The notes below the pieces were generated by a model, which saw only the letters and a program-made list of their open reading frames with translations, made no database searches and was not told the origin of the DNA. From positions 62,001 to 126,000 of the forward strand of contig NW_026869034.1 of assembly GCF_020745735.1 (NCBI RefSeq): a stretch of DNA of 64,000 nucleotides, written 5' to 3'. Below, piece after piece: positions 11,611 to 63,409 of this stretch (position 1 is its first letter; the number at the start of each line of letters is the position of its first letter). The DNA is from Hemiscyllium ocellatum (lineage: Eukaryota). The translations under genes were made by a program, and so were the position numbers.

Positions 11611-14580
11611 TAGTACCTGAAAATAAAGATACTATGCGTGACTTGGTGATGGGAAGTAAATATGTTACCTTGTGTGGAAGGAAGGTTCTGGATATAAACA
11701 ACATTTTTGTAAATAAAACAAACTCCATTCTGTCTGCTCAGTTTTTTTCGTACACTGGTTTACCTTCAGCATATTTTCCTTATATTTTGATTAGTTCAAA
11801 TTCATCTCATCCGCTGTTTTATACTTGTCAGCGCTTTGTTAACGGGTGTTTGCTGTTTCACAATGTATGTCGCCTTATCGTGTACGCTCTGGGAATTCAG
11901 TATTTGTAGTGTTTGTTGTTTCAACCTGTGCCTTGGTCTATTAGGCAAAATTACAGAAAAATGTTAATAGCAATTTAAGTTAAAATGTTAGGATATCGGA
12001 AGAACAGCTAAGCGCTTCAAAATATAACAGAGGGTTTTTGAGAAAAGACATGGAAAGCAGCAGGGTTTCCAGTCCGTTTGATCGCTGCCTTCCCTTATCG
12101 AAATCAACCTGTGATTTATCATTTTTGAGGATTGTTGTCCATTAATATTGGTGCATCAGATAGATCTCAGTCTCGAGCGGGTGTGACATGCCTCTTTGTT
12201 TTATGATGAACTCAGGGGTACATATAATATTAAGGGTGTAAATCCAAAGTGGTGCAGGAGCAGAGGATCCTCCGTTATATGTGCATAAATCAGAGAATGT
12301 ACCATGACAGGTGGACGGAAGAACAATAAAACTTACTTCAAGTACGCTGTAATTATGTTAAACTGAAATAAAACAGTCGCTTGTCTCACCTGAAATAAAG
12401 CATCCAGTTTCAGAAGCCACATTTTTAAAATACGCAAATCTATGAGACAGGCTGCGTGCCGGATTCACAACACTGTTCCTGGGATGATGTACCTTACGGT
12501 TTCTGAGAAATTGGAACTGTTCCCCACTGCTGAACATGTGAATAGTTGCTATGATTGGTTCTCAATTCCATCTTGCGTCATATAGATTGCAACGGTTGAA
12601 TATTTCTAGCACTTCTTGAGCTCTGCCTTGTCTGATCGACATCGACCACTGATTTATTATTTTTGAGGGCTTCTGTTCAGTAATATCCCTGAGTTAGAGA
12701 GACCTCAGTCTCTTTTCCTGGGATTTGACAGATATGGTGTTTCAAATAGATCCCAGAAATTGTTCTCCGTGACATTTAAATGTGAGAAAAACCCCAGTTC
12801 TGAGAATTCGCTCTTGGATTGTGCACGTGTTGTTTCTGAATACCTGACTGAACGGTGACATTTTTGGCTGATGAATGTTTCGTTGGGTGTGTAAGGTGGT
12901 GATTTGTGCATAACTAATCCACGCTGTTGCAACTTTTGGAGTAAATTTAATTTAGACAATGTAGAGTAAAGTTTCAATCTCCGTTGCCTGCCTTTTATAG
13001 GCTTCTGGCGGATCAACGCTCCAAATTTGTATCATTATGTATATCAAGGCTGTGACCGTTAATGCGAAAGAGGAAAAGTTCTCTAATCATTTTGTTTCCG
13101 GTGTGTTCCACGAGGCATATCGTGATAAGTGGGCCACGTGGTGGCGCAGCATTCACCTAAATGACTGGATGAAACACAACCAAACAAAATAAGTGAAGGT
13201 ATTTCGCTGGGAAAGGAGTGTGGGGACGTGAGAAAATGTGTTATTACTGACTGACCTTGAAGCAACAATTAAGCAAACTCAAGGTTAGTGCATATTCATT
13301 CGAGATTAATTAACCATTTTAGAAGGCATTTTGTATCCAAAACGTTGATGTAAAAGATAACAGAAGCAAATACTGTGGCTGGATGCCGCATTGAGACAAG
13401 AACGCATGCGCTGTGAGCTGTGAACTTTCTGTGTATCTGTAACAGTCACCAGAAATGGAATACAATGGCTCATCACCATTTTGAATAATGAACAAATAAA
13501 AACAAAACAAATAGGCTTCAAACAAAGGGGAAGCTACAAGTTCTTTCAACCACAATCATTACAACGATATCAAAGGATATAATAGGAAAACCCATCAATA
13601 ATTGTCTCAGTTACACGCTGATAAACTGAAGTGATCTCAGCAAGTGAACAGTCAGCAACAGGGCTGATTGTCGATATGGAATTCAGCGACCTTGTTATGC
13701 AGATCAGGAAAACCTACGGGGTCGACAACTCATTCACTTTACCTGGAAAAGGGAGATAAAACAATGATGCAGATGCTTATGGTCAGGAGCATTCAGATTC
13801 AATTTTTATTCAATGGCACACTTAGAGATTTCACAAAACATATTCGGCTGCTTGGCGTGTGAAAGATGTTATTATTCTGACATTCACCAGAGTGGCAGCA
13901 GCGCTGTAAAAAGGTACTCAGGAAGAATAGGGTGATGAATGTGGAAGCAGTTGTACAGATGTTGCTGTTATCATCTTCATAATCTTCAATCCAAGTGTGA
14001 TCTATTGAACCTACGAATATAAAGACGAGAGAACACACTTAAATAGTTAATTGACCCAGTCCGATCTATCTGCATCTAAGTTATGTAATTAGAGACCATT
14101 ACATGTTCAGGAAGTAGTCAGACATTTATCAAACGTGACTCTGTTAGCTGTATCTATTAGAGCATTACTGATTCTCAGCAGGAACTTACAAATTCTAACT
14201 GCACATGTTCTTTCATCACTGACTGTCAGAACATTTCAAATTACTTTTTCTTTTAATCTATTATTGAAGAATATTATTATTTGAGGAATGGATATTAGGA
14301 ACGAGTATCGTAATTATTTCCTTATATTTTAAATATAGGATGAGCCCCTCATAATACGTGTGAAGAATTTAGATCCATACTTGCAAAGGCAAGACACACA
14401 AGGCAATGGATCAAGTGCTGGCACATGAGACTGGAATAGTTAGGTGGCTGTTATTTATAGGATGGACCAAAGAGCTTTTTCCTGTGCTGTATAAGGCGAA
14501 TCTTTTAAAAATGTTATAAATAATGCCTTACTCATGTTAATCACAGATGTTTTGTTTATCTAATTTACCACAACACTTAC

Positions 14581-14876
14581 CCTGACATGGCATTTCTTTG
14601 CTCTTGTGCGACCCGCTGTGTTAAACCAGTAGATTTTGCTGGGGTAATCTACTGTTGACCCGGGCAGGGTTAATTGGCTGCGCTGGGTGTAGGTTCCCTT
14701 GTTGTATACCACTGATGGGTAAGTCTTCAATCCAATCGTGATTAGCTCTCCACCTTTATTAAAGATTACCTTGGTTATTTCAGGGAAATAGTCCATCGCC
14801 AAACAACCAAAGATCACAGAACCGGTATCGTGGTCATGACAGGACAAGAGCAGGCCATAAAGCGTGGGGGAGACGG
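14581..14876 (-). pseudogene. IGHM: IgM Cmu1 pseudo-exon of left cluster
   Basis: Homologous to 55577-55882. A 9-nt deletion removes the acceptor AG, and there is a 1-nt deletion in the poly-C. The conserved Trp is changed to Phe (VIFNK), and a 4-nt deletion destroys the second Cys. Donor GTAAG is retained. Confidence 0.92.
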
Positions 14877-15224
14877 GATAGAATGACCAATTGAGCACAT
14901 TAGGTTCTGTTAATTTGTCCTTGTCAGTTACTCAAATGTATCCTCAGCTGTACAAGTTTGCCAGTATGCTCCTGCTGAAGTCTACAGCGTAACTGGAGTT
15001 TATTTTTGTTTCTTACCAGTTGTTGATCATGCTGTATTGATTCCCTCTTCAGAAACAAGCCCTCTAACATGACCATTACCATAAGATTTATGAAGAAGAA
15101 CATCCTGATCCCACTACCAGTAACTATTTGAAAATCTCACCAACTGACATTTTCACTGGGTTGCAAGTGAAGAACGGAGAGGTTTCACAAAATACAAACC
15201 AAGTAAATACGGATTCATCAAAAT

Positions 15225-15515
15225 TCGACAGTGTGTGCAAACAGGCCATTTGACCCAACAAGTCGACAACCACCCTTTGAAAAATAACCTATCCAGACAC
15301 ATTTCACCCTGACTAATGGACCTAACCTCCCAATCCCTAAATGCAACATGACGAAGTCACCCAGTTTGCACATGTTTGAACTTTGGGAGGAAACCCTGAC
15401 AGACATGAGGAGAAAGTACAAACTCTTCACAGACAATCAGCCGAGGCTGGAATCGAACAAGAGTCCCTACGACTGCGAGGCAGCAATGCTGACCACCGAA
15501 CCAGCACGCCACCCC
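15225..15515 (-). mobile_element. tRNA-derived SINE, orthologous to 54870-55225
   Basis: Reverse complement of the SINE head at 15470-15515. Same position relative to Cmu1 in both clusters. Confidence 0.75.
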
Positions 15516-16109
15516 ACTATGCACTGTGCAGCTGGAAATCACAAACAAAATTGCTTGGAATTGCTTGACAAACCCGAAAAGCTGGCAGTGTTTCTGGCGA
15601 TAAATCCAAGTGAATGGTTCAGGTCCAGTGATCGTTGTTCATTTATCAAAACAAGGCAGAATGTCCTCTCTGGGAAGAAGGTCACTGCAGCAGCAGCACA
15701 GGCAGGAGCTGAGCACTGAGACTGGAGGATGTCTGTCACTGCTGACCTCATGCCAATTGTCTGGAGGTTGAAACTTGTAATTTACAATTATCTGAAGTCT
15801 GGTGGCTTCTGAAAAATGGAGGACTCATAAAGGTTCAGAGACTTTGGAGCATTTCAGCTAACTGAGCCGACAATGTACGTAAATCTGATTTGAAAAAATA
15901 AAAGTACTCTTTAACTTTAATAACTGTCAAACTGACACGCAGTTCACTACCAAAACTCTCATCTGTCACAGACAAACAACTGTTCTCCCTCCCTATCCAG
16001 ACATGAATTTCCACACACATTGACAAACCTTACCCTGTTACACACAATTCGTGGCCGGAGTACAGCACCCCTTTCACAAGAAACACATCCAAGGCAATCC
16101 ATATCGGTA

Positions 16110-16500
16110 GGGTAGATGAGCAGAGATATCCTTGCGTCCATGTACATAGATCCCTAAAAGTTGCCAGGCTCGTTGATAGGAATGTTAGGAAGTCATACTT
16201 TGAGTTGGCTTGCATTGGAAGAAGGGCTGAGATTCAAAACCATGACATCGTGCTGCAGCTGTACAAAAAACTGGTGTGGCCGTACTTGGAGTATTGTGGT
16301 CACCACATTATAGGAAGAATGTGGAAGCTTTGGAAAGAGTTCAGTGGAGGTTTAACAGAATGTTGTCTGGTGTGGAGGGAGGTTTAATGAGGAAAGGATG
16401 AGGGAATTGAGGTTGTTTTTGTTTGAGAGAACAAGGTTGCGAAGTGACTTAATTTAGACATATAAGACAATCAGAGGGTTCGATAGGGTGGATAGGGAGT
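16110..16500 (+). mobile_element. CR1 RT C-terminal fragment (shared with the right cluster near 54000-54310)
   Basis: VDEQRYPCVHVHRSLKVA / VLQLYKKLVWPYLEYC matches the 96-1259 protein. Confidence 0.8.
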
Positions 16501-16624
16501 CTTTTGTGATTTACACATGAAAGAAGTTAAACTATCACTGTATTCTAACAGATGAAATGCTTAACAGTCAATCAATTTTTCAATGTATAATTTCAGTTAT
16601 GGCACACTGAAAAGTTTTGCTATA

Positions 16625-16745
16625 AGTTCTGTGTTACGATCGAGCACTCCACAATCACCTGATGAAGGAGCGTCGGTCCGAAAGCTAGTGTGCTTCCAAT
16701 TAAACCTGCTGGACAATAACATGGTGTTGAGTGATTTTTAACTTT
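16625..16745 (+). mobile_element. Penelope-like terminal repeat fragment containing a minimal hammerhead core
   Basis: cac-CTGATGA-aggagcgtcggtcc-GAAA-gcTA-gtg at 16656-16690, followed by aattaaacctgctggacaataac. Confidence 0.6.
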
Positions 16746-16749
16746 GCTT

Positions 16750-18330
16750 TCCTAGTATATGCTTATAGAGTTAAAATCGCCTATCATATCCATCCTATTA
16801 TTCTTACATATAGCTGAGGTATCCTTACACGTTTGTTTCTCAATATCCCTCCATCTATTAGGGGGTCTAGAATACAAAACCAAAGCGCATAATCATCCCT
16901 TTCTTAATTCTCAGTTCCACACAAACAACTTCCCTGGATGTATTTCCGGGAATATCCACCCTCAGCACAGCTGTAATGTTATCCCTTATCAAAAATATCA
17001 ATCACCCTCCTCCCTTGCCCCCCTTTCTATTCTTCCTGTAGCATTCGTATCCTGGAACATTAATCTTCCAGTCCTGACCATCCCTGAGCCATGTACCTGT
17101 GATTGCTATGATATCCCTGTCCCATGATCCTAACCATGCACTGATTTCACCTGCCTTCCATGTTAGGCCCCTTGCAATGAAATAAACACTGTTTAATTTA
17201 TTCGTCCTACTTTGTCCCTGCCTGCTCTGACTGTTTGACTCGCTTCTGTTTTCAATTGCACTAGTGCCAGATTGACCTCTTTCCTCACAATCTCCCTGGG
17301 TCACAACACCACCCCTCTCCCTACCTTACTAGTTTAAATCCTTCCGTTCAGCTCTAGCAAATTTCCCGGTCAGAATATTGGTCCCATCCAATTTAGGTGC
17401 AATCCGTCCTTCTTGTCCATATCACTTCTAACCCAAAATAAATTCCAATGATCCAAAATTATGAATCCTTCTCCCATACACCAGCTGCTCAGACTCGCAT
17501 TCATCTGCTCTATCCTCATATTCCTGCCGTCTGTAGCTCGTAGCATTGGGAATAATCCAGATATTACTACTTTCCAGGACCTCCTTTAATATTTTCTGCC
17601 TAACTCTCTGTAATCTCCCTTCATAATCTCAATCTTTTCCCTTCCTTTGTCCTTGGTTCCAAAGTGGACAATGTCCTCTTGCTGTCCCCTCTCCCCCATG
17701 AGAACTTTCTGCACTCTCTTTGAGACATCATTGATCCTAGCACCGGGGAAACAACACACCATTCTGCTTTTTCGCTGCTGGTCACAGAAAGGTATCTCTG
17801 CACTCGGATTGCAGAATCCCTGAACACAATTGATCTCTTTGAAGCCGATATAACCCTCATTGCATTAGACCTAGTCTCAATACCAGAAACTTGGCTGTTC
17901 GTCCTATGTTCCCCTGAGATTCCATCACCCCCTACATTTTTCAAAACAGCATACCTGATTGAATCGGTACAACCACAAAAGACTCCTGCACTAGGTGCCT
18001 ACCTATCTTACATTTCCTGGAGTTAACCCATCTATGTGACAGTATCTGAGACATCGCCCCTTCCTATAACTGCCATCCATGAGATACTGTTGCTTCTAAC
18101 TGTCTCTCCAACCGATCCATTCGATCTGGTAAGATTCGCATCAAACAGGACCTATGACAGATATAATCTGCAATAATGCTTAATCTCTCTTTAAACTCCC
18201 ACATCTGACAAGAAGCACATACCACTCTATTAAAGCCAATTTTTACTCCTTCGTAAGTTACAGAGCCAGAAATTAATACAGTCTTATTCCTCGAGAAAAC
18301 ACTGCCCCACACAAACTTTAGCAATTCAAG
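16750..18330 (-). mobile_element. CR1 LINE 5' fragment (ORF1 and start of ORF2 endonuclease); not seen at the orthologous site of the right cluster
   Basis: Minus-strand ORFs: SCQMWE...YICHRS (ORF1 zinc finger), IVFRDSAIR (GDSIVR-like esterase) and DIIAITGTWL...PGYECYRKNRKGGKGGG (endonuclease). Confidence 0.85.
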
Positions 18331-21273
18331 TCAGTTGATGATGATTTGTTTCTCAAGGAAAAGCCTGACACTTCCACGCTTGTCTAGAGATGCAGATAAT
18401 CACTGGAGGCATTGAAAAGTATTTACACGAATTGCGAATGGTTTCTTTCTGTGTAGTTTGGCTTCTTTTTCTCTGAACAAACAGTGTTACTTCTTAATCA
18501 TATTGTGGGAATGAAGATTGCCTCATTTTTTAAAGCAGAAATCACACATTATACTTCCCTGGAATAAAGAAATATAATCTAAACTTAATGGAATATGGTG
18601 ATTGGGATGTTTAAATTGTAAGTTATCAGAGATTTAAAGCTTATTTTCACGACCAATTAATTCCAGCCTCAATGGGTCACTTTAACTTCTCACAGAAATG
18701 TCTTTAAACAACGGTTTATCCCTTTGTTAAGGAAAGTAAAATCATTGAACTATGGATAGGTTTTACTTGCTAGTCAAAGATGGAAAAGAGTTTTAGCCAA
18801 AGAGAGGCCTGAGAAAATAGTGCGCGGATGCACCCTGATCTAAGTAATGGGGGAACAGCTCGAGGGGCTGAGTGCCCTCCTCCTGCACTTTCCTATAATT
18901 GTGTCCTTCATTAGGCTAGCACTGACACTGAACAATTTTTATTAAAATATTTTAACAAATTAATTGTTTCACAAATTCTTAAAACATCTTTGATTATTTG
19001 GAACGCGAGCATTGACGTTCTATGTTTGAGTGATCAAAACAACTCCCACCCAATTACAGCAGTCACTGCAATCTGGAGTGTGTTGTTACTTCACGAAACA
19101 GTTTCTTGTGAAAATACAGCTTGAAATCAGGGTTCTCACATTCAATGATTTTCTGATATTAAATATCTCTGAACATTCTCAATTTCTTCAAACGCATCTT
19201 CTCTCTGTACAGCTTGTTTAATCGAACAGAACTTCTTTTTAATGAAACAACAAACTTTGATTGCTAGCAAACCAAAATAAAGACAGAAGTTTCTGAAGAT
19301 TCTCAGTAGGTCTCGTGGCGGCTCTGGAGAGAAAGTAAGGTTGACATTGCGCGTTCCGAGATCCCCCTTCAAAAAATTGTTTTCATGTTTTTGGCACCTG
19401 TTGAATTAGACAGCGATTACGTTTGCTTGACTGCTGTTGCAAAAAGATTCTTAGCAAAGGTACTGGAATGCGTAAGATAGCAACTGATGACTAGTTGAAA
19501 GGCTATCACCATCTGCTGGAAGTGTTGGATTCAGCGGAACCCCCACTGCACTGAACAGTCAAATTCAACCACAGCACTGGTTAAATATAAAATAAAACAA
19601 CCTAGGCATGATCTCAACAAAAATGCTTCAAAGCAATTCATTCTGGAATAGTTATACATGTTATTGTTAGAATGGTAATTTAAAAGCTGGGATTTATTTG
19701 AGGGGTTATTCCATTAACCCCAGCTAGTGATGTCCAAAAGCTTGTGAACAAAAATGGACTTGGAAAGAGCTGCTAACCGCCAAAGTTGTTTAATATCTAA
19801 GAGACACAAATCAGGATTGCGATTGAATAGATTTCAACGGCCTCTGTGAATGGAATTCCAAAAAAACTCCCAAACGACTCGATCTGGTTTTTTGCCCCGA
19901 ATGAAACTGATTAGAGATGATGTTACATACGTCTCTAACAGGTTGTAAGTGAACACAGGCCACGTGGCATGGAGTCAGGGTCACTACTACAATATCACAG
20001 CAGACCTGAACACAATGAGCTCGACACTATATCGGAGAGCACAGCCCACCTGTTTTACAGTGCATAAACCATGTTAATTATTAACACATTCCAACAAATA
20101 AGGATTGTTCCAGAATGTTTATGCAATGAAATTAACATTGCAACAATTTTCCAGGAATACTTTGACTGTAAGTCTGAATTGTCCAAAGTCTGTGGGAACT
20201 ACAGAGGAATAAAACTATGAATTGCACTGCCATAAATTCACTGTCACTGGACTTCAACGTTGAACTCCCTTCCTCTTACTCATTAATGTTGATGCACCAG
20301 ATGGTCTACTTAGTTAGAAATAGATTAAAACATTTTGAACTGTATTATGACATTTTCCAGTGACATTAAAAGCTGGCAAAATGTTTTCAAATAATACAAT
20401 GCAAATTAATTTCTGATCCTACATTGTGTCACTAAACACGTCCCGGACAATCGAGGCACAACGAAAATAAGCAGCATATTTTCCTCTGCCTCGCTCAATT
20501 ATATATCCCTTGTTGCCAACAACCAATTGAAACACTCTTGCAATCTGCCTTTTGTTACTGATGTGTTCGTTCTGATACTAAAACATGACCAGGGCTCTCA
20601 ATTCAGAGGCACCTAATCAAATATTCTATTTCTGGCAGATAAGCATGGTTTTGAAATGGGATATGAAATTGAACTGTCGGAGATTCAGGTATTGGAACCG
20701 GACAACTTACAAATGGTCAGGATCAGTTGACAAGTTAGTCGGAGATAGCACCGAAACATATTGTACAACAATCTTGGTCTTTCCAATATATCTGCTCAAT
20801 TCCTCAGGTCCAATATGTTCACTGTAATTGAACATTCATCGTAGGAATGAAAAAGATAATACCCATTAATGTGAACGAGAATGGGTTCACAATGAACATA
20901 GATAATCACCGATTTAATCAACTAAATAAGTCATTGTAATTAACAACATTATTGATGTAGGACATATTGCAAATTTATGCACAGGTGCAAAGGAAATGGA
21001 TTCTTCTTTAAATTATTTTTACGTATTCTGAAAACATTTCTTGTACTCGAAGATTTTACATATTCTGGACAAAGCCAATACTCCATTCCAGTGTGGCAAT
21101 GCGTTTCTGTTGAAACAAATAGGGCAAGTATTTACTATCAGGTTTTCTTTACAATGGGTGGGTCAGTTTCTTGTTAGCTGTTTTGCAACATACGAAAATG
21201 TTTTAAAAAGGTATAAATTGAAAGCTTGCTTCTGTCTGGAGTTGCCCACTTTAAATGAGGTCTAAGTAAATAT

Positions 21274-21590
21274 GGGCGGCGTGGTGGTTTCGTGATGAGC
21301 ACTGTTGACTTTCAGATTCAGATTCCCGTGCTTGGTTCCAGCCTCAGGTGACTGTCTGTGTGGAGTTTACACATTCTCACCTGTGTCTGCATGGGCTTCC
21401 TCCCACAATCGAAAGATGTGCTGGCCAAGTGAATTGGTAATGCTGAATCATCCATAGTGTTAGGTGCATTGATCTGGGGTGTATATAGGGTAGGGTAATA
21501 TGTCTGTGTGGGTTAGTCTTCAGAGAATCGGTGTGTAATTTAAGGGACAATGACCCGTTTCCATAGTGTAGGAAATCGAATCTAAATGAT
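21274..21590 (+). mobile_element. tRNA-derived SINE, orthologous to 46385-46675
   Basis: gggcggcgtggtggtttcgtg head, with matching flanks in both arms. Confidence 0.75.
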
Positions 21591-21939
21591 CGCCACACTT
21601 AACTAATGCTAAGTACATTGCAAAAATTGGTCAAGTACATTAATTAAAAAACCCTCTATTTTCAGTCTGAATACACAACGTGCTCTGATATCCTCTCGTT
21701 CATGTCTTCTGCAAATTTATGAACTCTGCATATGTCTGAACACGTCGACGCAGACTACGTTCTCTGCATTCGCAACAAGCATTCCTACTGTTTTACAGTA
21801 GATTTCCAACAGTATGGAAAAAGGCCACTGTACTCAACAATTCCACACCGACCCTCCGAACAGTAAGTAACACATTCCACCTACGCTATATTTACTCCTG
21901 TCTAATGCACTATAACCTACACATCCCTGAATTCAATGT

Positions 21940-22170
21940 TTAATTTAGCACAGCCAATTCACCTAGCCTGAACACCTTAGTGACTTTGGGTGGCGGGGGG
22001 TGGGGGGGGGGTTTGTGGCGGGGGTCGGGGGGCGAGGTAACTGGAGCACACAGAAGAATCCCGGACATGGGGAGAATGTGCAAATTTTACACAGGTAGTC
22101 ACCCGAGAATGGAATCGAAATGCGGTCCGTGGTGCTGTGCAATGCTCACCACTGAGCCAGCATGCCGCCC
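21940..22170 (-). mobile_element. tRNA-derived SINE, orthologous to 45737-46090
   Basis: Reverse complement reads gggcggcatgctggctcagtggtgagc, with matching flanks in both arms. Confidence 0.75.
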
Positions 22171-23904
22171 TATGAGTTAATGCGTGAATTATTTTAACTA
22201 ATTAAAAATTTGGCCTTGATCACATAATTCCACATAGCAGTTGTTTCCGAAAGAATGACTTCAATTGAAATTTTGTTGTAAAATGTAACTATTCATTTAA
22301 AACGCATGGATTGGGAACACCTAAAGCACTGTGCAGATTAAATCATTCAGTCACTGTTTTATGTTTTTCCTGCAATTCCAGTTTAATCAGCGACATAAAA
22401 ATTAATTGACTCGTTTTACTTGTGCAACTGATCAAAGCAGTGAAACTGGTCTGTTCTTCATCGAATTGGGCAGAATTTCCAAATGGTCTTTGCCAATGAT
22501 CTTTTCCAACCAGAAAACTGTGTGTAGTGTACAGCGGAATTGAAAAGTGATTCTTGACTAATTACAACATAGTCATGGCATCTTTGCTCAAGAGCAAGAA
22601 CTATTAGAACAACATACTTTTGAAATTTTATTTACATTTCTCTATGACTTCCAAATGTTTGGAAGACAGAACTTGTGATTCAACTGGATAGTTGAGTTTT
22701 GACTTTGGATTGTAAATAGTGGACTAGATTAATCCTTAGTTATTACTTCTCATTACATTTAAGTCATCATTGTTCATGGAATAGTGCAGGTTAGATGGGC
22801 TTCAGATTGGTGTGATAATCCGGTGCAACATCGAGGGCCGAAGGGCCTGAACTGTGCCGTAACTTTCTATGTTCTCACTAAAACTCGCACCCTAAGGTAT
22901 CGTTTTTTCCTTCATTTCCAAAAACATTGCGATTTGCCTTTCACGTAATACTAGGCTTTATGAAGATTCAACTGGCATGCTGATTGCATCGAATGAGATA
23001 ACTGGAGCAGTTCACTGACACCAACCATGTTAACAGTGCAATAACAATGTAGAAACCAGAAACAGTTTCCCAAATGTAACAAAATTAATGTTACAGTCCC
23101 TCCTCCTCATTAGAGCAAAGATCAACAAATGACAACACTGAGGAAACCGATGGGATTGCAGCAGAACGGGCTCTGCAAACATTTCCAACCAAAAACATGA
23201 TGTTACCTCACAAAAAAAAGAAATCAAAACAAAGTTGTACAGATTCCAGGCAGAGAATGATCAAATTGAATAGAAATACCAAATAATAACAGCAGCCTTG
23301 TTTGTGAGGTGATTTACTTAATACTTTAAGCTGTAAAGCTTTCGGAAACAGTTCAATTTATTTCCAATCTGTACACCTTTTGCGGTCATGCCATTCTTGT
23401 GTTGTGCACAGTACAGCAGTTGAAGTCATATAATGATTAATCAGATTGAGATCAAAATAAAGTTAGTTCAATAGGCAAACATTATGACATTATTATTTTA
23501 AATTATAGCAAGTTCATTTCAATAACGTAACCTGATCAATTCTGCAGTTTCAGATTTTAATCCCAAATTTTACTTTGAAAGATGTAACTCGAAACAAACT
23601 TGACTTAGTTTACAATTAGAGCTGAGGTTTTTTTTTAAAAAAATAATGCACTAAAATACTTTTTTCTCATTTCTTTCACTTCCGTGTTTCTGCCTTAAAT
23701 TCGTTTTCAGACAGTTACAAACAGACGTAATGTTTTCAATCAAGCAGCAAAAAAAATGCCAGATGAATTTAATAAATGTAGCAACGGTTCAGCAAAAACA
23801 AAGAACCTCACAAAAATTCGTAATTAAAGTAATCCAGAGAGACCATCTCCTCACCAGAAAGAAAACACGAATTACTGAAAGTATGAAAACGCAGATCAAT
23901 TTCA

Positions 23905-24150
23905 CAAAATGAATAAGAATCCAATCAACTCACTGCAACTGAATCATAAAATAAACTCATAATAAAATCAACTGAAAACAACAGATTTAAATGAAAGATA
24001 ATCAGAATCCAACCAACTCAATTCAACTGAATCTTATAAAACAATTTAAAAAAGGTAATCAGTGTGATTCAACAAAACCAAGTAAAAACAAAGTCGGAAT
24101 CCAAGTCAACTCAATTCAACAGAATCAAACAAGAAAAATCAGAATCTAAT
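23905..24150. repeat. Degenerate ~45-bp tandem repeat in J-C intron (left cluster)
   Basis: Recurrent AGAATCCAAYCAACTCAATTCAACWGAATC units near 23916, 24005 and 24096. Reverse complement of the 43900-44165 array. Confidence 0.7.
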
Positions 24151-24665
24151 CCACAGAAGGAAACATAGTATCCCAAAAAAATACATTTTATAACCAGCTT
24201 GTCATCAACAAAACTTACAAAATAAAGGAGAAAATATAATCATGGTAAGAACATTATGTATACAGAAAATATATTCAAGAAATGAATAATGATATTTTCG
24301 CATATTTTAATCATGTTTGTTAATATTTCAAAAATCTTTTAATTCTGAGCATTTACTGTCGATAATAAAACTCACAATTAGAGTGTCACTGACATTAAAC
24401 ATTATTTATACCTGACCGATGAAGCCAAATTAGGTGTTTCTCACAGAATGACCACCTGATTAAAAAAAAGATACACCGAGCAACTGACTCCGTCATCATC
24501 ATTTTAACTATTTGCTGAACCTTAACTGAAGTCTATAATCAGCCTGAAAAAAATCAATCCGAACCAAATCACCTCAGCACAGAATGTGAGTTTCACTTAA
24601 TTCAGAAATTAGTCACACGAATAGAGAGTTTTAAAAAAGTCTCTAAGAAAGTTCAAAGTTCTTAC

Positions 24666-24711
24666 CTGAAGTCACTGTTACCATGATCCCTTCGCCCCAG
24701 TAATCAAGTTA
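24666..24711 (-). pseudogene. IGHJ: JH segment of left cluster
   Basis: *LDYWGEGIMVTVTS followed by donor GTAAG (24665-24661). Confidence 0.92.
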
Positions 24712-24749
24712 GCCAGTGTTACAGTCTCTGGACTGCTCACACCATAACT
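24712..24749 (-). other. Damaged JH RSS (22-bp spacer)
   Basis: AGTTATGGT-22nt-CACTGGC. The heptamer is disrupted relative to CACTGTG in the right cluster. Confidence 0.75.
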
Positions 24750-24984
24750 AGATCTGCATTAAAAAAAAAACAAAAATCAACCATTATTTTAAATTTTCGG
24801 ACCCACGGGCAAAATAAAGTCACGATATATCTTAATCACATAATTGTGCTAGTGGATTCTGATCATTTTGACAAATTTTAATGTTGTTTTATACTTCACA
24901 GTGTAACATATGAGCTGATTCTGAAAATCACCAAATGGCGTATCAATACTTAGCAGCACTTATACAAATTAAACAAAGCTAAAA

Positions 24985-25095
24985 ATCACACACCACAAGG
25001 TCATAGTCCAACAGGTTTAATTGGAAGCACACCTTTGTACCTTTTTTTTAACCTTTGTACACCCCAGTCCAACACAGGCATCTCCAACTCATGAC
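24985..25095. mobile_element. Short Penelope-like terminal fragment inserted in the D2-J interval of the left cluster only
   Basis: aaaaatcacacaccacaaggtcatagtccaacaggtttaattggaagcac is the reverse complement of the 16690-16745 sequence. No counterpart at 42964-43271. Confidence 0.6.
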
Positions 25096-25208
25096 AAATA
25101 AAACAGTGATACTTTCATAAAACCCCTCAGAACTAATACTGCACTGTAAGTTAAGACGATTTGTACAAGTAACCATTTAATAAATGCAGAAATAATGGAG
25201 GCTGAATA

Positions 25209-25236
25209 CGGTTCTGCATTGATCATAAATGCCGTG
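25209..25236 (-). other. Degenerate 12-bp-spacer RSS directly after the pre-joined V(D)
   Basis: CACGGCA-tttatgatcaat-GCAGAACCG aligns with CACTGCA-attatgatcgat-ACAAAAACC at 42936-42963. Confidence 0.8.
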
Positions 25237-25697
25237 TACCAACTGCACAGTCTTAAGGTTAATCATGTCCAACGCAAAAATGTTGTTTGAACTGCCTATG
25301 GAAGCAGTAAATCGTCCTTCAATCGTTGGTGCACAGTTATTGTTGGATGAAGTTTGGTACCAAAGCAGCCACTCCAGGCCCTGCTCGGGAACTTGTCGGA
25401 CCGAGTGCAGGTAGCAGCTGCAAAGATTGAACTTGCTGGTTTTACAGGTCAGTCTCAGGGTGCCTCTGGAAAGGCCAATCCCTGCCTCTGGATGAGTCAA
25501 AATAACCTTTTACTGGACATCTTTAAAAAAGAAAATAAATAAACCTTGAGCATGAACGCTGATGAAATGATGGCTGAGTCGTTGACATTCCTGCAGTAGA
25601 CTGATATTGAGACAGTCACAAAGAGAGACTCGAACAAAAAATACTGACATGTTAAGACAGTCAGTAACAAGCTTAGAAAAATTGTCGACCTAATCGT
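25237..25697 (-). pseudogene. IGHV: IgM-type VH pseudogene (leader exon 25697-25649, V exon from 25520), germline-joined
   Basis: Leader xIRSTIFLSLLLTVLT has start ATG>ACG. TCA>TAA at 25512-25510. LTHPEAG...LRLTCKTS...[16 protein letters not shown]...GRFTAS has Trp>Ser. A deletion removes EDTAIYYC. Confidence 0.93.
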
Positions 25698-25898
25698 TGT
25701 GATAACTTGTGGAAAACGGTTCTGTCAAGGTCTTTCTAAACAAAGCCGATCCAGGAGTGTTGAATTATGGTCCAGTGCCCAGGATTAATATGACCATCAG
25801 AAGGCTCAGGCTTACAGTTTCCACCTATTGGTTTCCTGCTGGATGCTGAGACCGGATCCTGGTATCAGCTTGCACAGCCCGAAGAGATGGACTCATGT

Positions 25899-42437: not shown

Positions 42438-42935
42438 ATGATTGTATCGACAATTTTTCTCAGTTTGTTACTGATTTTCTTATCATGTGAGTGTTTTTTG
42501 TTCAAGTCTTTCTTTGATACTGTCTCAATGTTAGTCTACCTCAGGAATGTCAAAGACTCAGCCATCATTTCATCAGCGTTAATGTTGCAATTTAATTTGT
42601 TTTCTTTTCAAAGGTGTCCAGTCAGAGGTTGTTTTGACTCAGCCAGAGGCAGAGACTGGCCCTCCTGCTGGTAGCCTGAGACTGACCTGTAAAACCAGCG
42701 GGTTCAATCTTGGCAGCAGCTACATGCACTGGGTCCGACAAGTTCCCGGCAAGGGCCTGGAATGGCTGCTGTACTACTATACTTCAGTCGACAAAAACTA
42801 TGCACCAGCGATATTGGGCCGATTTACTGCGTCCAAAGAGACTTCAGACAACATTTTTGTGTTGAACATGGGAAACCTGAAGATCTAAGACACGGCCATC
42901 TATTACTGCGCAAGAGCAGTGGGTAGGTGGATATT
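42438..42935 (+). pseudogene. IGHV: IgM-type VH, germline-joined to D sequence (leader 42438-42486, intron, V exon 42614-42916, junction 42917-42935)
   Basis: MIVSTIFLSLLLIFLS|[16 protein letters not shown]...[31 protein letters not shown]...GRFTASK...NLKI*DTAIYYCARAVGRWI. GT/AG sites are intact. The single TAA at 42886-42888 lies where the EDTA Glu is expected. Confidence 0.96.
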
Positions 42936-42963
42936 CACTGCAATTATGATCGATACAAAAACC
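42936..42963 (+). other. 12-bp-spacer RSS (D2-type 3' signal)
   Basis: CACTGCA (42936-42942), a 12-nt spacer and a perfect nonamer ACAAAAACC (42955-42963). Confidence 0.92.
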
Positions 42964-43271
42964 TTTCAGACCCTATTGTTTGCAACACGTCAGTGATTAT
43001 TTCTACAAACCGTCTTAACTTGCAGTGCAGTATTAGTTCTCTGGGCTTCTGTGCATGTTTAATTTGTAAAAGTGGTGATAATTATTGATACACCAATTGG
43101 TTATTTTGAGAATCAGCTCAAGTGTTACTCTGTGAAATATAAAACAACATAAAAATTTATTAAGAATGATCAGAATTCACTAGCGCATGTGATGTAGCTT
43201 CATTGTGACTTAATATTGCCAGTGGTTCCGAAAATGTAATGGGAGATTTTTGGATTGTTTTATGCAGAGCT

Positions 43272-43310
43272 AGTTATTATGTGGCCCAGTGCAGACAATG
43301 TAACACTGTG
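43272..43310 (+). other. JH RSS with 23-bp spacer
   Basis: AGTTATTAT (6/9 match to GGTTTTTGT), 23 nt, then a perfect CACTGTG (43304-43310). Confidence 0.85.
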
Positions 43311-43358
43311 CCTATCTTGATGACTGGGGCCAAGGGACCATGGTGACAGTGACTTCAG
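43311..43358 (+). CDS. IGHJ: JH gene segment, intact
   Basis: YLDDWGQGTMVTVTS with the WGxG motif, followed by donor GTGAG. Confidence 0.96.
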
Positions 43359-43899
43359 GTGAGAATTTTAACCTTAACTGTGATTTTTTAAAAACTTTCC
43401 ATTCATGTGATTAATTTCTGTATTAAATGAAACTCATATTCTGTCTTGAGTTTGGTTTGGTTCGGAATAATTTTTGTTCAGGCTGATTATAGACTTCAGT
43501 TAAGGCTCAGCAAGTGGTTATAATGGTTGTGACGGAGTCAGTTACTCTGAGTGTCTCTTTGTTTCGATCCGATGGGCTTTCAGTGTGGCTGGGTTACTTA
43601 ATGTCTCTTAATCAGTCAGGTATAAATAATGTTTAACGACAGTGACACTGGGACTATCGGTTTTCTTATCGACAACAAATGCTAAGAAGTTGAAGATGTT
43701 CAAAATATTACCAAACATGATTAAAAATGCTAAAATATCATTATCCATTTCTTGAATATATTTCCTGTACACATTATGTTCTTACCATGATTATATTTTC
43801 ACCTTTATTTTGCTAATTTTGTTGATGACAAGCAGGTTAGAAACTGTCATAATTTTTTGCAGGGCTATGTTTCATTCTGTTGATTGAGATTCTAAGATC

Positions 43900-50324: not shown

Positions 50325-52215
50325 AGTCATAGAGATGTAGAGCAAGGAAATAGACTCTTTGTTCCAACTCGTCCATGCCGACCAGACATCCCACCCCAAT
50401 CTAGTCCCACCTGCCAGCACATGGCCCCATATCCCTCCAAACACTTCCTATTCATATAGCCATCCAAATGCCTCTTAAATGTTGCAATTGTACCAGTCTC
50501 CACCACTTGCTCTGGCATCTCATTCCATACACGTACTACCTTCTGTGTGAAAAAGTTGTCCCTTATGTCTTTTTGTGTCTTTCCCCCTCACCCTAAACCT
50601 ATTCCCTCTAGTTCTGGACTCCCCGAACCCAGGAGAAAATAAACTTTGCCTATTTACTCTAACCATGTCCCTCAGGATTTTCTAAACCTGTATAAGTTCA
50701 AGCACTAAGTCTCTGAAGTTCCAGGGAAAACAGCCCCAGCCTGTCCAGCTTCACCCTCTAGCTCACATCCACCAATCCTGGCAACATGCTTGTTAAATCT
50801 TTTCTGAACCCTTTCAAGTTCCACATCATCTTTTCGATAATAAGGAGACCAGAATTGCACACAATGTTCCGACAGTGGCCAAAACAATGTCCTATACAGC
50901 CACAACATGTCCTCCCAACTCCTGCATTCAATACTCTGACCAATAAAGGAAAGCATAACAAACGCCTTCTTCACGATTCAATCTACCTGCGACTAGACTT
51001 TCAAGGAGGTATTAATGTGCACTCCAAGTTCTCTATGTTCAGCTACACTCCCTCGGACCTGACCATTAAGTGTAGAATTTCTGCTAAGATTTGCTTTCAT
51101 AAATGCAGCACCTCGCATTTATCTGAATTAAACTCCATCTGCCACTTCTCAACTCATTGGCCTATCTGGTCAACGACCTGTTGTTTAATGAGATAACCCT
51201 CTCCGTTGTCCTCTACACCTCCAATTTGGTGTCATCAACAAACTTACTAACTGTACCCCTTATGCTGGCATCCAAACCAATTATGTAAATGACAAGAAGT
51301 AGAGGCCCCAGTACCGATCCTTGTGGCACTCAACTGGGAACTGGCCTCAAGTCTGAAAAACAACTCTCCACCAAGACCCTCTATCTTCTACCTTTGAGCA
51401 AGTTCTGTATCCAAATGCTGAGTTCTCCCTGTATTCCGTGAGAGCTAACCTTGTTAATCAGTATCACATGGGGAACCTTGTCAAACGCCTGCCTGAAGTC
51501 CATATAGATCACATCTACCACTCTGCCCTCATAAATCCTTTTTGGTAATTCCTCAAAAAACTCAGTCAAGTTTGTGAGGCAGGCTTTCCCATACACAACA
51601 TCATGTTGACTATCCCTAATCAGTCCTTGCTTTTCCAAATCCAGGTACAGCCTGTCCCTCAGGATTCCCTCCAGCAACTTACCCACAACCTACGTCAGAC
51701 TCACTGGTCTATAGTTCTATGGCATTTCCTCCATAAACAGTGGCAACACGATAGCCAACCTCCAGTCATCCGGCTCTTCACCTGTAACTATCGTTGATAC
51801 AAATATCTCATCAAGGGTCCCACAATCACTTCTCTAGATTCCCACAGAGTTTTAAGCTACACCTGATCAGGTCATGTGGATTTATCCATCTTTACCCGTT
51901 TCAAGATATCTAGCAATGTCTTTAATAACATGGACATTTTACAAGATGTCACTATGCATTTCCCTATGTCTTTATCTTCAATATCCTTTTTTACAGTAAA
52001 TATTGACGCAAAATACTCTCGCCATTTTCTGCGGCTCAACACAAAAGCCACCATGTTGATCATTGAGGGGCCCTATTCTCTCCCTCGTTACTTTTTTGTC
52101 CGTAATGTAATTTTAAAAACTCTTCTGATTCTCCTTAATTCTATTTGCCAAAGCTGTCTCATGTCCCCTTTTTGCACTCCTGATATCCCTCTTAAGTATA
52201 CTCCTACTTCCTTTA
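50325..52215 (-). mobile_element. CR1 LINE RT fragment, right-arm-specific
   Basis: GKLLEGILRDR...CLTNLTEFFEE...YMDFRQAFDKVPH and PEQVVETGTIATFKRHLD. The 3' tail is at about 50325. Confidence 0.9.
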
Positions 52216-55576: not shown

Positions 55577-55882
55577 AGACACCGTCTCCCCCCACGCTTT
55601 ATGGCCTGGTCTCCTCCTGTGAGGACCACAACACCGGTTCTCCGATCTTTGGTTGTTTGGCAATGGACTATTACCCTGATGTAACCAAGGTAACCTGGAA
55701 GAAAGGTGGGGAGTTAATCACGACTGGATTGAAGACTTACCGATCAGTAAGAAACAAGAGTGGAACCTATACCCAGAGCAGCCAGTTAACCCTGCCCGGG
55801 TCAGCAGTAGATTGCCCCACCAAAATCTACTGTGAGGTTCAACACAACGGGTCACACAAGAGCAAAGAAATGCCATGTCCAG
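55577..55882 (+). CDS. IGHM: IgM Cmu1 exon, intact (306 nt, phase 1/1)
   Basis: [15 protein letters not shown]...[19 protein letters not shown]...KIYCEVQH...EMPCP, recognisable as shark Cmu1. Both domain Cys, the Trp and the splice sites are intact. Confidence 0.96.
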
Positions 55883-58907: not shown

Positions 58908-60801
58908 TCTGTTTGCGGAGCTGGAAGTTTTTGTTGCGAACGTTTCGTCCCCTGGCTAGGAGACATCATCAGTGCTCTGGAGCCTCCTGTGAAGCGCTTC
59001 TTTGATGTTTCTTCCGGTATTTATAGTGGTCTGTCCTTGCCGCTTCCGGGTGTCAGTTTCAGCTGTCCGCTGTAGTGGTTGGTATATTGGGTCCAGGTCG
59101 ATGTGTTTGTTGATGGAGTTTATGGATGAATGCCATGCCTCTAGGAATTCCCTGGCTGTTCTCTGTCTGGCTTGCCCTATGATAGTAGTGTTTTCCCAGT
59201 AGAATTCATGTTGCTTGTTGTCTGAGTGTGTGGCTACTAGGGATAGCTGGTCGTGTCGTTTTGTGGCTAGCTGATGTTCATGGATGCGGGTTGTTAGCTG
59301 TCTTCATGTTTGTCCTATATAGTGTTTTGTGCAGTCCTTGCATGGTATTTTGTAAACTACATTAGTTTTGCTCATGTTGGGTATCGGGTCCTTTGTTCTA
59401 GTAAGTTGTTGTCTGAGCGTGGCTGTTGGTTTGTGTGCCGTTATGAGTCCTAAGGGTCGCAGTAGTCTGGCTGTCAGATATGAAACGCTTCTGATGTATG
59501 GTAGTGTGGCTAGTCCTTTTGATTGTGGCATGTCCTCGTTCCGTGGTCTATCTCTTAGGCATCTGTTGATAAAGTTGCGCCTCACTACACACTTCACAGT
59601 CAACAATCAGATATACGAACAAATCAACGGAACACCCATGGGATCACCAATCTCGGGACTCATAGCAAAGGCAGTTATTCAAAGGTTAGAACAAACAACC
59701 CTACCACAAATTCAACCCAAACTCTGGGTCAGATATGTCGATGACACTTTTGTAATCATCAAAAACACAGAAATAGAAAAAATACACCGGATCATCAACG
59801 CCACACTCACAGGAATCCGATTCACGAGAGAAGAAGAAAAGGATAGCCAACTCCCATTCGTGGACGTGTTAATACAGAGAACACTGAACGGAGAATTCAC
59901 CACAAGGGAACACAGGAAAACACCACACACAGACCAAGTCCTAAACTATGAAAGTAACCACCCCCATCACACACAAACGAAGCTGCATCAGGACACTATT
60001 CAAAAGAGCCACAACACACTGCAGTACACCAGAACTGCGAAAAGAGGAACACCTATAAAAGGTATTCGCCAAAAACGGATACCCGCGCAAATTTATCAAG
60101 ATGCCTAAGAGATAGACCACGAAACGAGGACATGTCACAACCAAAAGGACTAGCCACACGAGCATACATCAGGAGTGTTTCATATCTGACAGCCAGACTA
60201 CTGCGACCCTTAGGACTCATAACGGCACACAAATCAACAGCCATGCTCAGACAGCAACTTACTAGAACAAAGGACCCGATACCCAACATGAGCAAAACTA
60301 ATGTAGTTTACAAAATACCATGCAAGGACTGCACAAATCACTATATAGGACAAACAGGAAGATAGCTAACAATCCGCATACATGAACATCAGCTAGCCAA
60401 AAAACGACACGACCAGCAGTCCCTAGTAGCCACACACTCAGACAACACGCGACAAGAATTCGACTGGGAAAATACTACTATCATAGGGCAAGCCAGACAG
60501 AGAACAGCCAGGGAATTCCTAGAGGCATGGCATTCATCACAAACTCCATCAACAAACACATCGACCTGGATCCAATATACCAACCACTACAGCGGACAGC
60601 TGAAACTGACACCCGGAAGCGGCAAGGACAGACCACTATAAATACCGGAAGAAACATCAAAGAAGCGCTTCACAGGAGGCTCCAGAGCACTGATGATGTC
60701 TCCTAGCCAGGGGACGAAACGTTTGCAACAAAAACTTCCAGCTCCGCGAACAGAACCACAACAACGAGCACCCGAGCTACAAATCTTCGCACAAACTTTC
60801 A
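58908..60801 (+). mobile_element. Young Penelope-like element with inverted duplicated 3' end and 13-bp target-site duplication
   Basis: RT motifs GTPMGSPIS and WVRYVDDTF (59581-60080) and GIY-YIG VVYKIPCKDCTNHYIGQT. 58908-59580 is the reverse complement of 60085-60754. ATAATATATAAGA flanks both ends (58895-58907 and 60802-60814). Confidence 0.9.
60675..60745 (+). ncRNA. Minimal type I hammerhead ribozyme in the Penelope terminal repeat (inverted copy near 58935-58990)
   Basis: gca-CTGATGA-t-GTCTCC-tagcca-GGGGAC-GAAA-CG-TT-tgc: core boxes, a 6-bp stem II, palindromic stem III and a 3-bp stem I. Confidence 0.6.
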
Positions 60802-60872: not shown

Positions 60873-61183
60873 GTCCAGATGTTTTCCCTCCAACTCTTCT
60901 CCTGACTGTGAGTCCCAATGAAGAAATCACAAGCAACAAGTATGCCACTCACGTCTGTTAATATTCGATTTCTATCCAAAGTCAACCTCAGTGATTTGGT
61001 TGAAAGATGGCCTACCTTTGGATTCTGGCTTCTTCACGTCTCCTGTGTGTGAGGCGAGCGGGAACTTTTCGGTGACGAGTCGCCTGATGATCCGTTATAG
61101 TGAATGGTTCGACAGCGCAGTCTATACCTTCCAGGTCACTCATGGAGAGAACACTCAAAGTAAAAATATCACCGCATTCCAGG
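60873..61183 (+). pseudogene. IGHM: IgM Cmu2 exon with 1-nt deletion and second Cys>Phe
   Basis: [19 protein letters not shown]...HVC then TAA at 60959-60961. The shifted frame continues [17 protein letters not shown]...[16 protein letters not shown]...AVYTFQV. Splice sites are intact. Confidence 0.93.
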
Positions 61184-63100: not shown

Positions 63101-63409
63101 GAGATACTGTGCGCCACGATTACACAGTTAAAATCCTCCCGCCACCAGTAGAACAGATCTTGCTGGAGGCGACGGTGACTTTAAGCTGCCTTGTGTCCAA
63201 TCTTCCTTCTGGAGTCAACGTCACCAGGATACAAGAAAAGAAGCCTCTGAAATTAGAAATTGCTGACCAGTCTGGACAGAATCCTGGCAGTGCGATTAGC
63301 AAATTAGAAATTTCGACTGAAGCCTGGCTGAGTGGCATTACTTTTGAATGTGTGGTGTACCATCAGAATCTACCAACTCCGTTGAGAGACTCCATCCACA
63401 AGAAGAAAG
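63101..63409 (+). CDS. IGHM: IgM Cmu3 exon, open frame (309 nt) but conserved Trp>Arg
   Basis: [42 protein letters not shown]...[25 protein letters not shown] splice sites are intact. Confidence 0.94.

What the first reader, a model, noticed from the sequence alone, without database searches (positions are those of the whole stretch)
42901..43358. Germline-joined V-D-D fused to a 12-RSS, one recombination step from a complete VDJ
Seen in sequence: after YYCAR there is no V 23-RSS and no V-D or D-D intersegment. The sequence runs TGCGCAAGAG-CAGTGGGT-A-GGTGGATATT, then CACTGCA-12nt-ACAAAAACC. A 23-RSS-JH follows 308 bp later. The junction is in frame (CARAVGRWI). Established: shark IgM clusters are V-D1-D2-J with a 12-RSS 3' of D2, and germline-joined VD-J/VDJ clusters are known in elasmobranchs. 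Inference: this is a fossil of RAG activity in a germ cell. CAGTGGGT is a trimmed D1 end, the next few bases may be N-additions, and the remaining 12/23 pair is still compatible.
Basis: partly seen in the sequence, partly recalled or inferred. Interest (0 to 1): 0.85.

Follow-up and report, generated by a model that had tools for sequence, protein, structure and literature searches.

The report
Pre-joined shark antibody gene, now dead
This is a shark IgM antibody gene whose V, D1 and D2 pieces were already fused in the inherited DNA, a kind of gene known in sharks since the 1980s, and this copy is a broken pseudogene that was recently copied several times.

Summary
After YYCAR there is no V signal sequence and no V-D1 or D1-D2 spacer. 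A 21-base joint runs into an intact 12-spacer signal (CACTGCA-12-ACAAAAACC). A 23-spacer signal and JH follow 308 bases later, and Cmu1-3 lie downstream.

A fully split cluster of the same genome (L030) gives D1 = ATACTACAGTGGGT and D2 = ATATAGCTGGAGTGA. The joint therefore reads V GCAAGAG + D1 CAGTGGGT + D2 (T)AGCTGGATATT, with a later C>G change. No N nucleotides are needed.

The join is inherited, not somatic:
- The same joint occurs in 8 copies on 5 contigs, at 95.8-100% identity.
- One 343-350-base unitig crosses it without a difference in 4 samples of 2 studies, and a fifth sample holds the stretch.

It has an in-frame TAA in FR3 (42886-42888), a 1-base deletion in Cmu2, and has lost a canonical Cys. 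So "one step from a complete VDJ" is true of the structure only.

Partly joined VD-J clusters are an established feature of cartilaginous fish, so this is a new member of a known kind. The sampled clusters of this genome show 7 of the 8 possible joining states. The scan also noted a VD-J IgM gene elsewhere in this genome (s1-191620, not checked here).

The parts
42438..42486 (+). Leader exon (MIVSTIFLSLLLIFLS + 1 nt), GT donor at 42487
   Evidence: aligned with leaders of paralogs
42487..42613 (+). Leader intron, retained (rules out a retro-copied cDNA)
42614..42916 (+). VH exon up to the V-derived end GCAAGAG (YYCAR)
42886..42888 (+). In-frame TAA stop in FR3. It is GAA in the 96% copy on C217 and in all other paralogs looked at.
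   Evidence: No other letter was listed at this place in 4 runs.
42917..42924 (+). D1-derived CAGTGGGT: the untrimmed 3' end of D1, with 6 nt trimmed at the 5' end
   Evidence: Germline D1 is ATACTACAGTGGGT in the split clusters L030 and L047-49.
42925..42935 (+). D2-derived AGGTGGATATT. It is AGCTGGATATT in copy L008. The 5' end is trimmed by 3-4 nt; the 3' end is untouched and abuts its RSS.
   Evidence: Germline D2 is ATATAGCTGGAGTGA, ATATAACTGGGGTGA or ATATAGCTGGAATGG in split clusters.
42936..42963 (+). D2 3' 12-RSS: CACTGCA / ATTATGATCGAT / ACAAAAACC
   Evidence: The same heptamer and nonamer, and a spacer differing by 1 nt, occur in the split and VD-D-J paralogs.
42964..43271 (+). D2-J intersegment (308 nt)
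   Evidence: Homologous to the D2-J intersegments of paralogs.
43272..43310 (+). JH 23-RSS: AGTTATTAT / 23 nt / CACTGTG
   Evidence: The nonamer variant AGTTATTAT is also present in the VD-D-J clusters L043-46.
43311..43358 (+). JH segment (YLDDWGQGTMVTVTS), GT donor at 43359
55577..55882 (+). Cmu1 exon, open. The J-Cmu1 intron is 12.2 kb and holds reverse-transcriptase-like ORFs.
60873..61183 (+). Cmu2 exon, broken. One base is deleted between 60959 and 60960, right after the first canonical Cys. The second canonical Cys is changed to Phe (TTC 61129-61131).
   Evidence: Alignment with 6 paralogous Cmu2 exons.
63101..63409 (+). Cmu3 exon, open. Cmu4 and the TM exons lie beyond the window end.

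Best explanation
This is a germline-joined VD1D2-J ("VDD-J", the classical "VD-J" type) IgM heavy-chain minilocus of a cartilaginous fish.

In an ancestor's germ line, a normal V-D1-D2-J cluster underwent two RAG-type deletional joins, V to D1 and D1 to D2. These removed about 780 bp of intersegment and four signal sequences. They left a trimmed coding joint without N nucleotides. The D2 12-RSS and the J 23-RSS remained untouched.

The joined cluster was then inherited and duplicated. One branch (the copy on C217) keeps an open V and an open Cmu2. The branch that holds the window acquired a TAA in FR3 and a frameshift in Cmu2. It was then amplified as units of about 40 kb.

Shown: the anatomy, the D1/D2 assignment, the multi-copy inherited status and the inactivating lesions. 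Inferred: that RAG did the joining, that it happened in germ cells, and the order of the two joins.
For: 1. Anatomy.

2. Split reference cluster L030 in the same genome:
- V ends GCAAGAGAC, followed by CACGGCG-23-TCAAAAACA.
- D1 is CATTGTG|ATACTACAGTGGGT|CACAGTG-23-CAATAACCA.
- D2 is CACAGTG|ATATAGCTGGAGTGA|CACTGCA-12-ACAAAAACC.
- J is CACTGTG|ACTATCTTGA...
These spacers follow the 12/23 rule for V>D1, D1>D2 and D2>J. The window joint is explained base for base by trimmed V + D1 + D2.

3. The deletions end exactly at coding/RSS borders, with 0-6 nt of trimming. No intersegment remnant is left in the window.

4. The leader intron is kept, so this is not a retro-copy.

5. The identical joint is present in L001-L007 (99.5-100% identity; contigs C1648 x2, C477 x3, C402, C336) and in L008 (C217, 95.8%). 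These copies form one clade with 100/100 support in the V tree and 100/99 in the D2-J tree.

6. Unitigs spanning 42688-43030 (42681-43030 in one run) with 0 differences were found in runs of 4 samples from 2 studies, at a depth like that of their flanks. A fifth sample holds 0.92 of the sampled words.

7. Pseudogene lesions.

8. Literature:
- Partly (VD-J, VD-DJ) and fully (VDJ) joined clusters are established (PMC5192425, PMC4279169).
- They are attributed to RAG activity in germ cells (PMC2193156).
- VDD-J is a frequent natural RAG intermediate in shark lymphocytes (PMC2435157).
Against: - No unrearranged member of this particular VH subfamily was found among the 40 scored candidates. D1 and D2 are therefore assigned from paralogs only about 85% identical, and the 3' end of D2 (ATATT) differs from theirs (AGTGA, GGTGA, AATGG).
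- Sample and run identities are coded. It is not on record that the 5 samples are different individuals, or that any is germ-cell or non-lymphoid tissue.
- The near-identical copies on small contigs could in part be haplotigs or assembly redundancy rather than true paralogs.
- RAG involvement is inferred from the geometry of the joints, not observed.
Confidence: 0.9

Rival explanations
1. A somatic lymphocyte rearrangement (a 2R VDD-J intermediate) was captured by the assembly and is not inherited.
For: VDD-J is a frequent somatic intermediate in shark thymocytes and B cells (PMC2435157). The source tissue of the assembly is unknown.
Against: - The same joint is present in 8 copies, including a copy on another contig that is 95.8% identical and carries its own substitutions in and around the joint.
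- There is a tandem neighbour 39.75 kb away at 99.3-99.6% identity.
- Identical unitigs occur in 4 samples of 2 studies, at flank-like depth.
- A single somatic clone could not reach assembly consensus, nor diverge by 4%.
Confidence: 0.02
2. The two intersegments were lost by RAG-independent deletions, for example replication slippage or end joining at microhomology, in a decaying pseudogene.
For: The cluster is a pseudogene. The neighbouring minus-strand cluster does carry ordinary deletions in FR3 and the joint. A single T could be shared between the D1 end and D2 (1-nt microhomology).
Against: - Two separate deletions each start and end within 0-6 nt of a coding/heptamer border and remove exactly the four RSSs that pair by the 12/23 rule. 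The two RSSs not involved are left perfect.
- The 96% copy has the same joint with an open V reading frame, so the joining preceded the decay.
- Many other clusters of this genome show equally precise joins at other borders.
Confidence: 0.04
3. A primordial gene that was never split: the joined state is ancestral and the split clusters are derived.
For: This was historically proposed for joined elasmobranch genes.
Against: - The joint contains recognisable trimmed D1 and D2 cores identical to those of split clusters, and it still carries a D2 RSS.
- In the V tree the joined clusters are scattered among split ones. The VDD-J label needs 6 changes, at least 3 of them forced by well-supported branches.
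- Lee et al. 2000 (PMC2193156) reached the same conclusion for light chains.
Confidence: 0.01

Closest known systems
Germline-joined "VD-J" IgM heavy-chain clusters of elasmobranchs, as summarised in PMC5192425 and PMC4279169. From my own memory, not checked here: first described in the horned shark by Kokubu et al. 1988.
   Same: - Cluster layout V(D)-J-Cmu.
- V, D1 and D2 are fused in inherited DNA.
- The leader intron is kept.
- J is still separate, with its RSS.
- The locus is one of many in a multi-cluster family.
   Different: This copy is a pseudogene (TAA in FR3, Cmu2 frameshift). It belongs to a recently amplified array of units of about 40 kb. The species is not identified here.
Germline-rearranged NS4 (kappa) light-chain genes of the nurse shark (Lee et al. 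2000, PMC2193156)
   Same: - The joints look like RAG coding joints, trimmed at the flanks.
- Joined genes are nested among split paralogs.
- Some are pseudogenes.
- Joined genes duplicated after the joining.
   Different: Those are light-chain VJ joins from a single event. Here there are two successive joins in a heavy-chain cluster, and one RSS pair is left.
Somatic 2R VDD-J intermediates in nurse shark lymphocytes (Malecek et al. 2008, PMC2435157)
   Same: The configuration is identical: V-D1-D2 joined, with the D2-J intersegment and both RSSs retained.
   Different: Those are somatic, clonal and carry N regions. This one is inherited, multi-copy and needs no N nucleotides.
Nurse shark IgM1gj (fully germline-joined VDJ, expressed in neonates; PMC4279169)
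   Same: A germline RAG-type joining of an IgM cluster.
   Different: IgM1gj is completely joined, functional and lacks Cmu2. The window gene is only partly joined and is non-functional.

Membership tests
Germline-joined VD-J (VD1D2-J) IgM cluster of cartilaginous fish | Minilocus layout: leader, VH, J and Cmu exons on one strand within about 20 kb | tested here: met
   Leader 42438, V 42614, J 43311, Cmu1 55577, Cmu2 60873, Cmu3 63101.
Germline-joined VD-J (VD1D2-J) IgM cluster of cartilaginous fish | The V 23-RSS, both D1 RSSs, the D2 5' RSS and both intersegments are absent, relative to split paralogs of the same genome | tested here: met
   Split cluster L030 has 414 nt between V and D1 and 369 nt between D1 and D2. 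The window has a 21-nt joint and no remnant of either intersegment.
Germline-joined VD-J (VD1D2-J) IgM cluster of cartilaginous fish | The joint is made of recognisable, trimmed V, D1 and D2 coding ends | tested here: met
   GCAAGAG | CAGTGGGT | AG(C>G)TGGATATT, compared with germline V GCAAGAGAC, D1 ATACTACAGTGGGT and D2 ATATAGCTGG....
Germline-joined VD-J (VD1D2-J) IgM cluster of cartilaginous fish | The remaining D2 12-RSS and J 23-RSS are intact and 12/23-compatible | tested here: met
   CACTGCA-12-ACAAAAACC and AGTTATTAT-23-CACTGTG. Both forms also occur in paralogs that still have open genes. Actual recombination competence was not tested.
Germline-joined VD-J (VD1D2-J) IgM cluster of cartilaginous fish | Present in inherited (non-lymphoid or germ-cell) DNA, not in a somatic clone | tested here: met
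   The same joint is in 8 copies at 95.8-100% identity on 5 contigs. It is in unitigs of 4 samples of 2 studies, and a fifth sample holds the stretch. Tissue and individual identities are not on record, so germ-cell DNA itself was not tested.
Germline-joined VD-J (VD1D2-J) IgM cluster of cartilaginous fish | Not a processed (retro-copied) gene | tested here: met
   The leader intron 42487-42613 and the J-C intron are retained.
Functional (expressible) IgM heavy-chain gene | Open reading frames in V and C exons, with canonical cysteines | tested here: not met
   TAA at 42886-42888; Cmu2 1-bp deletion at 60959/60960; Cys>Phe at 61129-61131. RNA-like runs of one sample hold next to none of its words (weak evidence).
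Product of RAG activity in germ cells | RAG1/2-dependent cleavage at the RSSs in a germ-line cell | not testable with these tools
   Inferred from the precision of the joints at heptamer borders and from their 12/23 logic. The mechanism was proposed in PMC2193156.

The most novel reading that the evidence does not exclude
The sampled IgM clusters of this one genome hold 7 of the 8 possible joining states:
- V-D-D-J: L030, L047-50
- VD-D-J: L027, L029, L043-46
- V-D-DJ: L018
- VD-DJ: L020-26, L051
- V-DDJ: L052
- VDD-J: the window family, L009-16
- VDDJ: L017, L019, L028

Joints differ between the clades I compared, and the states are scattered over the V tree. That would mean germ-line RAG joining has happened many times independently, and stepwise, in this lineage. 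It would give a natural series from which the rate, order and junction chemistry of germ-cell V(D)J recombination (for example, no N additions) could be measured genome-wide. Within it, the window family would be a dated example, in this order: join, then duplication, then pseudogenisation, then amplification.
Probability: 0.5. Interest if true: 0.5.

Novelty: new member of a known kind. Interest (0 to 1): 0.3.

Why it matters
Germline-joined Ig genes are the classical evidence that the V(D)J recombinase can act on the germ line and reshape antigen-receptor loci in evolution. This locus adds a clean, fully explained example. Both joins can be assigned to D1 and D2 without N nucleotides, and the order of events can be read off: joining, then duplication, then inactivation, then amplification.

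As a pseudogene it has no bearing on the animal's antibody repertoire. The wider value lies in the genome-wide set of joining states seen in passing. With a full census, that set could measure how often and in what order germ-line joining happens.

Tried and rejected
1. Shared origin with the minus-strand cluster. I first thought that the cluster in the window (V 25500-25177, J about 24715-24670) shares the same V-D1 joint, because GTGCAGTTGGTA resembles GAGCAGTGGGTA. That would have dated the join before a head-to-head duplication. The V and D2-J trees do not pair the two clusters. The shared bases are simply the invariant 3' end of D1. The claim is dropped: the minus cluster is also pre-joined, but a common event is not shown.

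2. Inverted D2 in L011. I considered that the D2 part of L011 (ACACTCCAGCTT) is an inverted D2. The RSS that follows it is the ordinary D2 3' RSS, which does not fit an inversional join. Left open.

3. Transcription. No run on record as RNA holds the stretch, and two RNA-like runs of one sample hold next to none of its words. This is weak evidence and does not show that the locus is silent.

4. Species. It was not identified, because run and organism names are coded. I ran no further search on it, since the answer would not change the classification.

5. Copy number from depth. Unitig depth cannot be calibrated here.

6. The first two genome-search runs failed because the machine was busy. The same request succeeded.

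Full report
**What is in the sequence**

The plus strand of the window carries a complete IgM heavy-chain minilocus:
- leader exon 42438-42486 and leader intron 42487-42613
- VH exon from 42614
- a JH segment at 43311-43358 (YLDDWGQGTMVTVTS, GT donor at 43359)
- Cmu1 at 55577-55882, Cmu2 at 60873-61183 and Cmu3 at 63101-63409

The V exon ends ...TAT TAC TGC GCA AGA G at 42916. The sequence then runs:
- CAGTGGGT (42917-42924)
- AGGTGGATATT (42925-42935)
- heptamer CACTGCA (42936-42942), 12-nt spacer ATTATGATCGAT, and the consensus nonamer ACAAAAACC (42955-42963)

After 308 nt comes the J signal: AGTTATTAT (43272-43280), a 23-nt spacer and CACTGTG (43304-43310).

**Assigning the joint**

A search of the window's own genome with 42438-43360 found dozens of paralogous clusters. 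I read the V-to-J stretch of 40 of them. L030 (C5) is a fully split cluster:
- V: GCAAGAGAC | CACGGCG-23-TCAAAAACA, then 414 nt to D1
- D1: CATTGTG | ATACTACAGTGGGT | CACAGTG-23-CAATAACCA, then 369 nt to D2
- D2: CACAGTG | ATATAGCTGGAGTGA | CACTGCA-12-ACAAAAACC
- then the D2-J intersegment
- J: CACTGTG | ACTATCTTGA...

The 3' end of D1 (CAGTGGGT) is the same in every split cluster that still has an unjoined D1 3' end, and in the VD-joined clusters that keep it untrimmed. The AGCTGG core of D2 is common, and the last 4-5 nt of D2 vary between subfamilies.

The window joint is therefore:
- V trimmed by 2 nt
- D1 trimmed by 6 nt at its 5' end and untrimmed at its 3' end
- D2 trimmed by 3-4 nt at its 5' end, with its 3' end still abutting its own RSS

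The 96% copy L008 reads AGCTGGATATT where the window reads AGGTGGATATT, so the G is a later substitution. The odd-looking heptamer CACTGCA is the normal D2 3' heptamer of this genome. Its position is confirmed by germline D2J joins in paralogs such as L020 and L051. Neither intersegment of L030 has any remnant in the 64-kb window.

**Germline or somatic**

VDD-J is a common somatic intermediate in shark lymphocytes (PMC2435157), so this rival had to be tested. It fails on four counts.
- The identical joint is present in seven copies at 99.5-100% identity (C1648 twice, C477 three times, C402, C336). They differ from each other by 3-18 substitutions per 3.9 kb. It is also present in a 95.8% copy on C217 that carries its own substitutions.
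- On the window's contig the whole cluster is repeated 39.75 kb downstream at 99.3-99.6% identity.
- The eight copies form one clade, with 100/100 support in the V tree and 100/99 in the D2-J tree.
- In public runs of the same organism, one unitig of 343-350 nt spans 42688-43030 (42681-43030 in one run), covering the stop codon, the joint and the RSS. It shows no difference in four samples from two studies, at a depth like that of the flanking unitigs. A fifth sample holds 0.92 of the sampled words.

The retained leader intron excludes a retro-copy. The precision of both deletions at coding/heptamer borders, and the fact that exactly the RSSs that pair under the 12/23 rule are gone, argue for RAG rather than random deletion. 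This last step is inference.

**The gene is dead**

Ten codons upstream, FR3 reads LKI*DTAIYYCAR, with TAA at 42886-42888. All other paralogs read, including the C217 copy, have GAA there.

Cmu2 has lost one base between 60959 and 60960, directly after the first canonical Cys. The second canonical Cys is now Phe (61129-61131). The C217 copy and five other paralogs are intact at both places. The tandem neighbour L007 has a further frameshift in V.

The order of events is therefore: join, then duplication, then stop codon and frameshift in one branch, then amplification of that branch. The C217 copy keeps an open V and an open Cmu2, but its J heptamer is CAATGTG, which should cripple cleavage. 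So even the best member of the family is doubtful.

No run on record as RNA holds the stretch, and two RNA-like runs of one sample hold next to none of its words. This is weak evidence.

**Comparison with what is known**

Reviews state that elasmobranch IgM clusters may be partly (VD-J, VD-DJ) or fully (VDJ) joined in the germline, and derive these from split genes on which RAG acted in germ cells (PMC5192425, PMC4279169). Lee et al. 2000 (PMC2193156) showed this for nurse shark light chains, including joined pseudogenes and duplication after joining. The window locus meets every structural criterion of the VD-J class that could be tested (see Membership tests). It fails only as a functional gene. 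It is a new member of a known kind.

**Wider picture, seen in passing**

Among the 40 clusters read, this genome shows seven of the eight possible joining states:
- V-D-D-J: L030, L047-50
- VD-D-J: L027, L029, L043-46
- V-D-DJ: L018
- V-DDJ: L052
- VD-DJ: L020-26, L051
- VDD-J: window family, L009, L010/12, L011, L013, L014, L015/16, and the window's own minus-strand cluster
- VDDJ: L017, L019, L028

Only V-DD-J was not seen. Joints differ between the clades I compared. On the V tree the VDD-J label needs 6 changes, at least 3 of them forced by well-supported branches. This points to repeated independent germ-line joining, although gene conversion between clusters could blur it. The census is incomplete, since only 40 of 111 candidates were scored.

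**Verdict**

It needs correcting on the N nucleotides and on function. The locus is a pseudogene of a well-known class, so interest is modest.

Noticed in passing
window 14560-25760, minus strand (V 25500-25177, J about 24715-24670, Cmu1 14898-14560): A second IgM cluster lies head-to-head with the first and is heavily decayed. It has no ATG, stops in V, deletions in FR3 and the joint, and a frameshifted Cmu1. It also lacks the V-D and D-D intersegments, so it is pre-joined too. The trees do not pair it with the plus-strand family, so a common joining event is not shown.
   Followed up: partly
G000:C1648:132891-156000 against window 31131-54266; also C477:838321, C477:888313, C477:1126989, C402:418497, C336:121484: The whole pseudogene cluster is repeated in tandem with a period of about 39.75 kb at 99.3-99.6% identity. 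It recurs at 99.85-99.92% identity on three other contigs. This is either a recently amplified array of dead IgM clusters or, in part, haplotigs.
   Followed up: partly
L008 = G000:C217:2041016-2044937 (minus) and L036 = G000:C217:2027589-2030920: This 96% copy has the same VDD joint, an open V frame (CARAVGSWI) and an intact Cmu2, but its J-RSS heptamer is CAATGTG. It is the least decayed member of the family.
   Followed up: partly
Loci L009-L030 and L043-L052 (own genome): Seven of the eight possible germline joining states of V, D1, D2 and J are present among the 40 clusters read. They include V-DDJ (L052), V-D-DJ (L018) and three fully joined VDDJ clusters (L017, L019, L028). There were at least 84 Cmu2 and 111 V candidates in the genome.
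   Followed up: partly
L011 = G000:C133:437984-441935, joint GTAAGACACTACCAGAGTGGGTACACTCCAGCTT: The D2 part of this VDD-J joint reads like the reverse complement of the D2 core (AAGCTGGAGTGT), yet the ordinary D2 3' RSS follows it. This is unexplained.
   Followed up: no
window 50700-51700 and 59300-60300; also 96-1259 and 5205-5678: Reverse-transcriptase-like ORF fragments (retroelement debris) lie inside the 12.2-kb J-Cmu1 intron and the Cmu1-Cmu2 intron, and also at the left end of the window.
   Followed up: no
L014 = G000:C181:8691837-8695502: This VDD-J cluster has an insertion of roughly 170 bp inside its D2-J intersegment. The sequence around it (...gataattattgata...) appears on both sides of the insert, which looks like a target-site duplication of a small mobile element.
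   Followed up: no
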